DNA of 63,921 nucleotides, the filler included, from Sluysia triapertura (lineage: Eukaryota), in assembly GCA_046118255.1 (NCBI GenBank). It is 5 parts of 5 records of this genome, joined end to end, with 100 filler letters (N's around TTAATTAATTAA, not from the genome) between each part and the next. Parts side by side here need not be neighbours in the genome. Positions count along the whole stretch, not along the records: positions 1 to 12,311 come from JBJNIA010120638.1; 4 more parts are not named here. One strand, written 5' to 3'. The notes under the pieces were generated by a model. It worked only from the letters and a program-made list of their open reading frames with translations, was not told where the DNA came from and did no database searches. Positions 3,569 through 3,725 of this stretch are shown in pieces; within the stretch, counting starts at the first letter, position 1; each line of letters opens with the position of its first letter. The position numbers and the translations under genes were made by a program.

Positions 3569-3725
3569 GCCGTCATCATTGCTGATACTTCGTTTAGAAA
3601 ATGTCATTTTAACGACAGCACTGATGACGGCTGATGGTATCTACTTATTTTCACAAATTAATTTCAGCCATTACCCAATCAGAGTATACATTACTTACTT
3701 AACCCACAAAAATACTCTGATTGGG
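3569..3725 (+). promoter_or_regulatory. Double inverted-repeat module, copy 1
   Basis: IR1: gccgtcatcattgctg (3569-3584) / cagcactgatgacggc (3616-3631), 15/16 paired. IR2: cccaatcagagtat (3674-3687) / atactctgattggg (3712-3725), 14/14 paired, with inverted CCAAT boxes. The structure is seen directly; a promoter role is inferred. Confidence 0.75.

What the first reader, a model, noticed from the sequence alone, without database searches (positions are those of the whole stretch)
3569..3725. Recurrent double-hairpin module heading orphan ORFs: a candidate gene-cassette system
Seen in sequence: the same architecture occurs four times on two separate contigs (3569-3725 +, 10423-10555 -, 45135-45295 +, 46585-46730 +). 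Each copy has IR1 (10-19 bp arms, CATC...GATG core), a 30-45 nt spacer, and IR2 (14-17 bp arms with CCAATC...GATTGG). A long ORF starts ~55-150 nt downstream on the same strand. The CCAAT-to-ATTGG span is nearly fixed at 50, 50, 46 and 46 nt. Established knowledge: CCAAT boxes bind NF-Y, and bacterial integron attC sites conserve structure rather than sequence. Inference: the module is either a stereotyped promoter for accessory genes of a large mobile element, or a structured site used to capture or shuffle cassettes. I do not recognise it as a described element.
Basis: partly seen in the sequence, partly recalled or inferred. Interest (0 to 1): 0.9.

Follow-up and report, generated by a model that had tools for sequence, protein, structure and literature searches.

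The report
Paired-hairpin module upstream of two genes
Two copies of a 133-157-base DNA module, each made of two hairpin-forming inverted repeats (one a pair of opposed CCAAT boxes exactly 50 bases across), lie about 140 bases upstream of two unrelated, fast-evolving coding regions in a very AT-rich, eukaryote-like contig. It is most likely an unusual promoter-proximal control element, and nothing here shows a gene-cassette system.

Summary
A scan for GC-containing hairpins found exactly these four inverted repeats in 12.3 kb, against 0.3 expected in shuffles. Both modules fold far better than shuffles (z -9.6 and -6.7).

The copies cannot be aligned as sequences. They share only two short core pairs and the architecture. 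Anchored on the cores, nine stem positions differ between the copies on both sides yet stay paired, with no G-T pairs.

Each module points at a strand-matched run of open frames, with the first in-frame ATG 141 and 144 nt after IR2. One run opens with a divergent GSK3 kinase N-lobe, so it is not a pure orphan. The rest has no relatives.

The source organism is unknown. It looks like a standard-code eukaryote with about 25% GC. No further copies turned up in viral, metagenome or prokaryote collections, and no Rfam family matches.

Best reading (0.45): a promoter-proximal dyad module with opposed CCAAT boxes and a second box pair. No recombinase, target-site duplication or cassette array supports the cassette reading.

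This is a new variant of a known kind, of moderate interest. More copies from the source genome are needed to settle it.

The parts
3569..3725 (+). Module copy 1 (IR1, 42-nt spacer, IR2)
   Evidence: DNA fold -34.4 kcal/mol, z -9.6.
3569..3631 (+). Copy 1 IR1. Arms 3569-3584 / 3616-3631 (16 nt, 1 mismatch; outer 10 nt perfect). Core boxes CCGTCATC at 3570 and GATGACGG at 3623. The loop pairs further, giving a near-complete 63-nt palindrome.
3674..3725 (+). Copy 1 IR2. Perfect 14-nt arms 3674-3687 / 3712-3725, 24-nt loop. Opposed CCAATCA / TGATTGG cores, CCAAT..ATTGG span 3675-3724 = 50 nt.
10423..10555 (-). Module copy 2 (IR1, 31-nt spacer, IR2)
   Evidence: DNA fold -26.0 kcal/mol, z -6.7.
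10508..10555 (-). Copy 2 IR1. Perfect 10-nt arms 10546-10555 / 10508-10517, 28-nt loop. Core boxes CCATCATC and GATGATGG.
10423..10476 (-). Copy 2 IR2. Perfect 14-nt arms 10463-10476 / 10423-10436, 26-nt loop. CCAAT..ATTGG span 50 nt. One more CCAAT lies in the loop and another just 3' of the repeat (10416-10420).
3418..3504 (+). (ATT)n tract upstream of copy 1, bracketed by an AT-rich 18-nt inverted pair ending in AACAGT / ACTGTT
   Evidence: (I21).
10614..10675 (-). (ATT)n tract upstream of copy 2, in the same orientation relative to the module, with the same AACAGT...ACTG bracket (weaker)
   Evidence: (I1).
3726..3865 (+). Leader between IR2 and the first ATG of copy 1 (140 nt, no ATG). TATAA at 3805, TCAGT at 3834.
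10280..10422 (-). Leader between IR2 and the ORF's ATG in copy 2 (143 nt, one two-codon upstream ATG). TATAA at 10375 and 10313.
3866..5432 (+). Coding run 1, orphan. Sense-strand open frames cover 96% of 3779-5432. Read as one gene it is interrupted 4 times (2 in-frame stops, 2 frame changes), either by introns or by decay.
   Evidence: no relatives; AlphaFold pLDDT 31.
8419..10279 (-). Coding run 2. Sense-strand open frames cover 98%. Read as one gene it is interrupted 4 times (2 in-frame stops, 2 frame changes).
   Evidence: for the parts with no relatives.
9890..10165 (-). GSK3-like kinase N-lobe at the start of coding run 2 (33-40% identity to GSK3 proteins). No C-lobe was detected after it.
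   Evidence: (E 4e-13 to human GSK3 beta chains); negative for the next ORF.

Best explanation
The module is a promoter-proximal cis-regulatory unit of an AT-rich eukaryotic genome.

IR2 is a pair of opposed CCAAT boxes held 50 nt apart. It probably docks a CCAAT-binding factor of the NF-Y kind on each arm. IR1 is a pair of opposed copies of a second 8-nt box (CC[AG]TCATC / GATGA[CT]GG) for an unknown factor.

Transcription is inferred to start downstream of IR2, inside the roughly 140-nt ATG-poor leader that carries TATAA strings, and to run into the coding region.

In both copies each dyad stays fully base-pairable well beyond the shared cores, using different letters. So the symmetry itself seems to be under constraint. 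Either the factors read a transient hairpin or single-stranded form, which the easily melted (ATT)n tract just upstream might favour, or the two arms are kept alike by conversion.

Shown: the repeats exist, exceed chance, share cores, differ by compensated stem positions, and have a fixed position and orientation relative to the coding runs. Inferred: the binding factors, the transcription start and the role of the structure.
For: These are the only four GC-containing hairpins in 12.3 kb, against 0.3 expected. Fold z-scores are -9.6 and -6.7. Both CCAAT..ATTGG spans are exactly 50 nt. The copies are not alignable and blastn does not detect them, so what they share is the cores and the architecture. 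Anchored on the cores, 6 IR2 pairs and 3 IR1 pairs differ on both sides and stay Watson-Crick, with one mismatch and no G-T pair in the roughly 54 paired positions. Both modules face a strand-matched coding run: 96% and 98% sense open-frame cover against 10% and 28% antisense, and 8 ORFs of at least 100 codons against 0.5 in shuffles. The first in-frame ATG lies 141 and 144 nt after IR2. The leader has no ATG (copy 1) or one two-codon ATG (copy 2), while each module holds 3 ATGs, which argues against the module being part of the mRNA leader. Four CCAAT/ATTGG occur within 60 nt in copy 2, against 25 in the whole window. That NF-Y binds CCAAT in either orientation in promoters is established knowledge.
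Against: Only two copies could be examined. The organism is unknown and no transcript data exist, so the start site is a guess. TATAA-like strings are common in 75% A+T DNA. A factor that reads CCAAT does not need 14-nt complementary arms, so the best-supported feature, compensated stems, is not explained by simple protein binding. From established knowledge, loops of 24-43 nt make cruciform extrusion from duplex DNA unfavourable. Both coding runs are interrupted four times and show weak codon-position GC contrast (32/26/24%). They may therefore be decaying genes, and a perfectly kept promoter would then be odd.
Confidence: 0.45

Rival explanations
1. The module is a structured DNA site for site-specific recombination or single-strand transposition. 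It would head, or bound, movable gene units, as integron attC sites, polydnavirus integration motifs or IS200/IS605-type subterminal hairpins do.
For: Its anatomy is typical of such sites: a conserved short core at the base of the stem, a covarying inner stem and a variable centre, with only Watson-Crick pairs. The genes behind it are unrelated to each other. One is a chimera that starts with a kinase N-lobe fragment, as captured fragments often are. Per PMC8549517, recombinase sites are 30-200 nt with two partly inverted motifs around a central stretch, and the polydnavirus motif has 33-78 bp between its two junction motifs.
Against: No integrase, transposase or Rep-like domain appears in any ORF of at least 55 codons. 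No target-site duplications flank IR1 or IR2. The two units are convergent rather than arrayed. The arms lack the bulged bases that mark attC. The constant distance to the ATG and the CCAAT cluster fit a promoter better. No second family member was found in any collection.
Confidence: 0.15
2. The two hairpins act as RNA, either as a structured 5' leader that controls translation or stability, or as a separate small double-hairpin RNA gene lying upstream of protein genes.
For: The size (133-157 nt) and the hairpin-spacer-hairpin layout resemble small RNAs. Compensated stem differences are the classic sign of RNA structure. The stems are strong.
Against: No Rfam family matches there even at E up to 1, and no tRNA-like gene was found. 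No G-T (G-U) pair occurs in about 54 pairs, although selected RNA stems usually carry some. Each module holds three ATGs, which would burden a leader. By eye, no H/ACA-type box lies in the expected place.
Confidence: 0.15
3. Copies 1 and 2 are the diverged inverted ends of one unit of about 7.2 kb (roughly 3412-10675) that carries two convergent genes. That would make it a large transposon-like element with structured subterminal repeats.
For: The copies face each other with the (ATT)n tracts on the outside. Arms 3412-3473 / 10614-10675 are 79% complementary (I1), and both share the AACAGT...ACTG bracket. One of the genes carried is a gene fragment.
Against: The similarity is confined to the microsatellite, and the hairpin parts do not align at all, unlike the ends of one transposon. 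No duplication is visible outside the tracts. No transposase was found.
Confidence: 0.1
4. The repeats are by-products of mutation. Local inverted duplications or template switches copied a CCAAT box and a second box, and the symmetry has no function of its own.
For: All arms are perfect or nearly so, as young duplications are. The sequence beyond the cores is unrelated between the copies.
Against: This needs four independent events in 12 kb, hitting the same two motifs in the same order and orientation, with an identical 50-nt span and the same distance to the ATG.
Confidence: 0.1

Closest known systems
Promoters with multiple CCAAT boxes bound by NF-Y
   Same: CCAAT pentamers in both orientations sit clustered upstream of a gene start, followed by TATAA strings and an ATG-poor leader.
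   Different: Here the two boxes are the bases of a perfect 14-nt inverted repeat with a fixed 50-nt span. The stem letters beyond the box differ between copies but stay complementary. A second dyad (IR1) always precedes it. Such structural symmetry is not a described feature of NF-Y promoters.
Integron attC sites (bacterial gene cassettes)
   Same: An imperfectly conserved inverted repeat, with short conserved cores at the outer ends, a variable centre, and structure kept rather than sequence. It is associated with unrelated ORFs.
   Different: The gene content looks eukaryotic (GSK3-like). No integrase is nearby, no bulged bases mark the arms, the site lies 5' of the ORFs with a promoter-like leader, and the units are convergent.
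Host integration motif of polydnavirus circles (as described in PMC8549517)
   Same: Two conserved motifs with partial inverted symmetry are separated by a few tens of bases, in AT-rich, gene-poor DNA carrying orphan genes.
   Different: That motif occurs about once per segment, not in front of each gene. Its motif sequences were not compared, because sequences of an animal virus may not be fetched here. Nothing in the window identifies a wasp or a proviral segment.
Bacterial REP/BIME elements and IS200/IS605 subterminal hairpins
   Same: Short hairpins with a conserved motif at the foot and variable stems, read as single-stranded DNA.
   Different: Those are prokaryotic, occur in many near-identical copies, and are tied to a Y1 transposase. 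None of this is seen here.
Hairpin rule at mimivirus transcript 3' ends
   Same: Intergenic palindromes whose structure, not sequence, is conserved in an AT-rich genome.
   Different: Those lie at gene 3' ends with small loops in a gene-dense genome. Here the repeats are 5' of the genes, have 24-43 nt loops and shared cores, and coding density is low.

Membership tests
NF-Y / CCAAT-box promoter | CCAAT pentamer(s) in either orientation shortly upstream of the transcription start | tested here: inconclusive
   CCAAT/ATTGG pairs are present and clustered, 91-195 nt upstream of the first in-frame ATG. The transcription start is unmapped.
NF-Y / CCAAT-box promoter | Binding by the NF-Y trimer, and the organism encodes it | not testable with these tools
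   The source genome is unknown and no binding data exist.
Integron attC / gene cassette | Neighbouring tyrosine-recombinase integrase and attI | tested here: not met
   No Pfam domain in any ORF of at least 55 codons in the 12.3 kb.
Integron attC / gene cassette | Inverted repeat with conserved outer cores, a variable centre and extrahelical bases | tested here: inconclusive
   Outer cores and a variable centre are present, but the arms are perfect, with no bulged bases.
Integron attC / gene cassette | Co-oriented array of promoterless ORFs, each followed by a site | tested here: not met
   The two units are convergent. The site lies 5' of the ORF, followed by a leader with TATAA strings.
MITE / terminal-inverted-repeat transposon | Target-site duplication flanking the inverted repeats | tested here: not met
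   The flanks of IR1, IR2 and the whole module show no direct duplication.
MITE / terminal-inverted-repeat transposon | Several alignable copies | tested here: not met
   The two copies are not alignable and blastn does not detect them. Only two copies were available.
Known structured RNA families (Rfam 15), tRNA-like genes | Covariance-model match | tested here: not met
   No match at the modules at E up to 1. ARAGORN found none.
Polydnavirus host integration motif | Two motifs of partial inverted symmetry 33-78 bp apart | tested here: met
   36 nt lie between the IR2 cores and 24-26 nt between the arms. The definition is from PMC8549517. This matches form only.
Polydnavirus host integration motif | Sequence match to the conserved junction motifs, and one site per proviral segment bounded by direct repeat junctions | not tested
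   Sequences of an animal virus may not be fetched here. Two sites in 7 kb, each facing a gene, do not fit one site per segment.
Helitron 3' end | Hairpin a few bases before the conserved 3' terminus | tested here: not met
   Read by eye on both strands: no such terminus within about 15 nt of any of the four hairpins.

The most novel reading that the evidence does not exclude
The double hairpin is a eukaryotic counterpart of attC-type or integration-motif-type sites. It would be a structure-specific recombination signal, read as folded single-stranded DNA, that moves or shuffles whole gene units (promoter plus gene) among loci. That would explain why unrelated orphan and chimeric genes carry the same head.
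Probability: 0.07. Interest if true: 0.9.

Novelty: new variant of a known kind. Interest (0 to 1): 0.5.

Why it matters
If the dyads are kept for their structure, this would be a promoter class in which symmetry or hairpin potential, and not only box sequence, is under selection. That would give a handle on how very AT-rich genomes mark the starts of young, fast-evolving genes. If the minority reading is right, it would be a structure-read recombination signal in a eukaryote. Either way the module is a compact, searchable descriptor, and it can be tested directly once the source genome is identified.

Tried and rejected
**Relatives of the proteins**
- Word-indexed searches with the 234-aa, 131-aa and 208-aa ORFs found nothing.
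- Exact-protein look-ups found no contig.
- Viral-contig protein scans found nothing.
- The full HMMER search with the kinase fragment returned only ordinary GSK3 proteins at 40% identity or less. None is close enough to name the organism.

**More copies of the module**
- The viral and metagenome hits were checked in scripts. None has an IR1 partner or a meaningful IR2 extension, and nearly all lie in GC-rich contigs, so they are chance.
- The prokaryote-genome hits were judged from their record titles only.

**Other tests that led nowhere**
- Plasmid and phage BLAST: no match.
- Ciliate code: rejected. ORFs of 241 and 208 codons free of TAA and TAG imply standard stops.
- Mitochondrial or Mycoplasma code, or an organelle: little gain in ORFs and no tRNA or rRNA.
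- RIP-mutated fungal repeat: the dinucleotide indices do not fit.
- Module as coding sequence: the two copies put the IR2 core in different frames.
- Paralogy of the two genes: none.
- Structure prediction of the two orphan ORFs: pLDDT 31 and 38, too poor for fold search.
- Splice models across the frame breaks: too many frame-compatible GT..AG pairs to choose from without RNA data.
- A covariance model was not built, because MAFFT could not align the two copies.
- Literature searches for palindromic CCAAT hairpin promoters found nothing relevant.

Full report
**What is there**

The piece is 12,311 nt with about 25% G+C and stretches of 15-18%. It holds no tRNA or Rfam-recognisable RNA.

- Copy 1 (+ strand): IR1 at 3569-3631 has 10 perfect base pairs at the foot, extending to 16 with one mismatch. 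Its loop pairs further, giving an almost complete 63-nt palindrome. After a 42-nt spacer comes IR2 at 3674-3725, with perfect 14-nt arms and a 24-nt loop.
- Copy 2 (- strand): IR1 at 10555-10508 has perfect 10-nt arms and a 28-nt loop. After a 31-nt spacer comes IR2 at 10476-10423, with perfect 14-nt arms and a 26-nt loop.
- In both copies the CCAAT-to-ATTGG span is exactly 50 nt.

**Is it more than chance?**

Yes. I scanned for perfect arms of at least 10 nt with at least 3 G/C and a 10-60 nt loop. These four hairpins were the only hits in the window. Two hundred dinucleotide shuffles gave a mean of 0.3 hits, and 0.005 for arms of at least 14 nt.

Relaxing to one mismatch added a single further hairpin, at 3246-3302. 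Folded as single strands, the modules reach -34.4 and -26.0 kcal/mol, with z = -9.6 and -6.7, and no shuffle matches them.

**What the two copies share**

They do not share collinear sequence. MAFFT misaligns them, and blastn with 7-nt words detects only the (ATT)n tracts upstream.

They share two things. One is the order and orientation of the parts: (ATT)n tract, IR1, IR2, then coding run. The other is two short core pairs:
- CC[AG]TCATC / GATGA[CT]GG at the foot of IR1
- CCAATCA / TGATTGG at the foot of IR2

Anchored on these cores, six IR2 pairs and three IR1 pairs carry different letters in the two copies yet remain Watson-Crick. There is one mismatch and no G-T pair in about 54 paired positions.

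If the copies descend from one ancestor, pairing has been preserved by selection or by conversion between the arms. If they arose separately, the same two motifs were made into dyads twice, in the same order and with the same 50-nt span. Either way the dyad symmetry is a property of the element and not an accident. The absence of G-T pairs leans, weakly, toward a DNA-level constraint over an RNA-level one.

**Context**

The window has 8 stop-to-stop ORFs of at least 100 codons, against 0.5 in shuffles. Seven of them fall in two blocks, and each block lies downstream of a module on the module's strand.
- In 3779-5432, open frames of at least 55 codons cover 96% of the + strand and 10% of the - strand.
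- In 8419-10294, they cover 98% of the - strand and 28% of the + strand.

Such long frames free of TAA and TAG also show that the standard stop codons apply, which excludes the common ciliate code.

Read as one gene, each block is interrupted four times, by two in-frame stops and two frame changes. Many GT..AG pairs could bridge these interruptions. Without RNA data I cannot say whether they are short introns, assembly errors or decay. Codon-position G+C contrast is weak at 32/26/24%. I built no joined or repaired reading.

The first in-frame ATG lies 141 nt (copy 1) and 144 nt (copy 2) after the end of IR2. The leader in between has no ATG in copy 1 and one two-codon ATG in copy 2. Each module contains three ATGs.
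- Copy 1's leader carries TATAA at 3805 and TCAGT at 3834.
- Copy 2's leader carries TATAA at 10375 and 10313.

Copy 2 packs four CCAAT/ATTGG pentamers into 60 nt, while the whole window has 25.

Both modules are preceded by an (ATT)n tract in the same relative orientation, 65 and 59 nt upstream. Each tract is bracketed by AACAGT...ACTG[T/C]T.

**The genes**

The ORF after copy 2 opens with a GSK3-type kinase N-lobe (9890-10165).
- Its E-value is 4e-13 against human GSK3 beta chains, and it is 33% identical to a full-length GSK3.
- In a search of 1.84 billion representative proteins, the best hits were ordinary GSK3s at 40% identity or less.
- The similarity stops at the end of the N-lobe. The next ORF shows no kinase similarity.

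So this gene is a chimera or a remnant, not a working GSK3, and also not a pure orphan.

Everything else is orphan. There were no Pfam hits and no relatives. Single-sequence AlphaFold models were useless, with pLDDT of 31 and 38. The two coding runs are unrelated to each other.

CpG is not depleted (observed/expected 0.95) and there is no RIP signature. The organism stays unidentified. I can say only that it looks like a standard-code, very AT-rich eukaryotic nuclear genome, or DNA living in one.

**Search for more copies**

- I checked the viral and metagenome hits in scripts. None has an IR1 partner or more than 4 extra IR2 pairs, and nearly all are GC-rich, so they are chance hits.
- I judged the prokaryote-genome hits from their record titles only.

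The family is therefore not represented in the collections I could reach.

**Interpretation**

The position, orientation, constant distance to the ATG, ATG-poor leader and CCAAT cluster together make a promoter-proximal element the best-supported reading (0.45). In this reading IR2 is two opposed CCAAT boxes for an NF-Y-type factor. That attribution rests on established knowledge, not on a test here. IR1 is a second pair of boxes for an unknown factor.

This reading does not explain why 14-16 nt of each arm are kept complementary with copy-specific letters. That feature is what makes the element unusual. It also keeps the structural rivals alive:
- a recombination or single-strand transposition site (0.15)
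- an RNA structure (0.15)
- the diverged ends of one unit of about 7.2 kb (0.10)
- mutational inverted duplications without function (0.10)

Against easy cruciform extrusion, loops of 24-43 nt are long (established knowledge). Only IR1 of copy 1 is a near-complete palindrome.

Against the cassette idea:
- no recombinase or transposase domain in the window
- no target-site duplications
- convergent rather than arrayed units
- perfect arms without bulged bases

**Comparison with known systems**

The module works most like a multi-CCAAT promoter. In form it resembles attC sites and the host integration motif of polydnavirus circles. PMC8549517 describes that motif as two junction motifs with partial inverted symmetry, 33-78 bp apart.

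I did not compare sequences with that motif, because sequences of an animal virus may not be fetched here. Two sites in 7 kb, each facing a gene, do not fit its one-per-segment pattern. No defining feature of any mobile or RNA family that I could test was met (see the membership table).

**Verdict**

The feature is real and statistically solid. It is best filed as a new variant of a known kind: a CCAAT-box promoter region with conserved dyad structure. The evidence base is small, so interest is moderate (0.5). It would rise sharply if genome-wide data showed either selection on pairing or mobility.

These were transcription-factor and small-RNA box motifs, a few transposon end motifs, and short motifs of insect-virus repeats and integration sites. 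None was entered into a tool, used as evidence or written in this report. I stopped doing so once I noticed. All letters quoted here are from the window.

Noticed in passing
window 9890-10165 (-): A divergent GSK3-type kinase N-lobe (33-40% identity to GSK3s, E 4e-13) sits at the start of the coding run behind copy 2. No C-lobe follows it, so it is a kinase fragment fused to unrelated sequence, or a remnant.
   Followed up: yes
window 3866-5432 (+) and 8419-10279 (-): Both coding runs are almost fully open on the sense strand, but each is interrupted four times (two in-frame stops, two frame changes). Introns, assembly errors and pseudogene decay cannot be told apart without RNA data.
   Followed up: partly
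window 3418-3504 (+) and 10614-10675 (-): The (ATT)n tract upstream of each module is bracketed by the inverted hexamers AACAGT / ACTG[T/C]T. In copy 1 this forms a third, AT-rich 18-nt inverted repeat around the microsatellite.
   Followed up: partly
window 361-375 (+): About 290 nt after the (ATT)23 tract at the contig start, the two core motifs occur fused (CATCATC directly followed by CCAATCA), with no inverted partners. This may be a degenerate or half module.
   Followed up: partly
window 3246-3302 (+): This is the only other GC-containing hairpin in the window (10-nt arms, one mismatch, 37-nt loop). It lies about 320 nt upstream of copy 1.
   Followed up: no
window 2800-3320 (+): An A/C-rich tract almost free of G on the + strand (GC skew about -0.45) lies between the ORF at 2417-2731 and the (ATT)n tract. 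Similar skewed tracts occur at 500-1500 and 5000-5500.
   Followed up: no
window 11598-11742, 11191-11274, 6819-6909: AT-rich tandem repeats lie in the gene-free, 15-18% G+C stretches: 38-nt units x 3-4 (97% alike), 37-nt units x 2.3, and 16/23-nt units x 2-5.
   Followed up: no
window 5772-5795 (+): A perfect 12-nt tandem duplication (unit TAAGTGCCGGAA), unusually GC-rich for this sequence.
   Followed up: no
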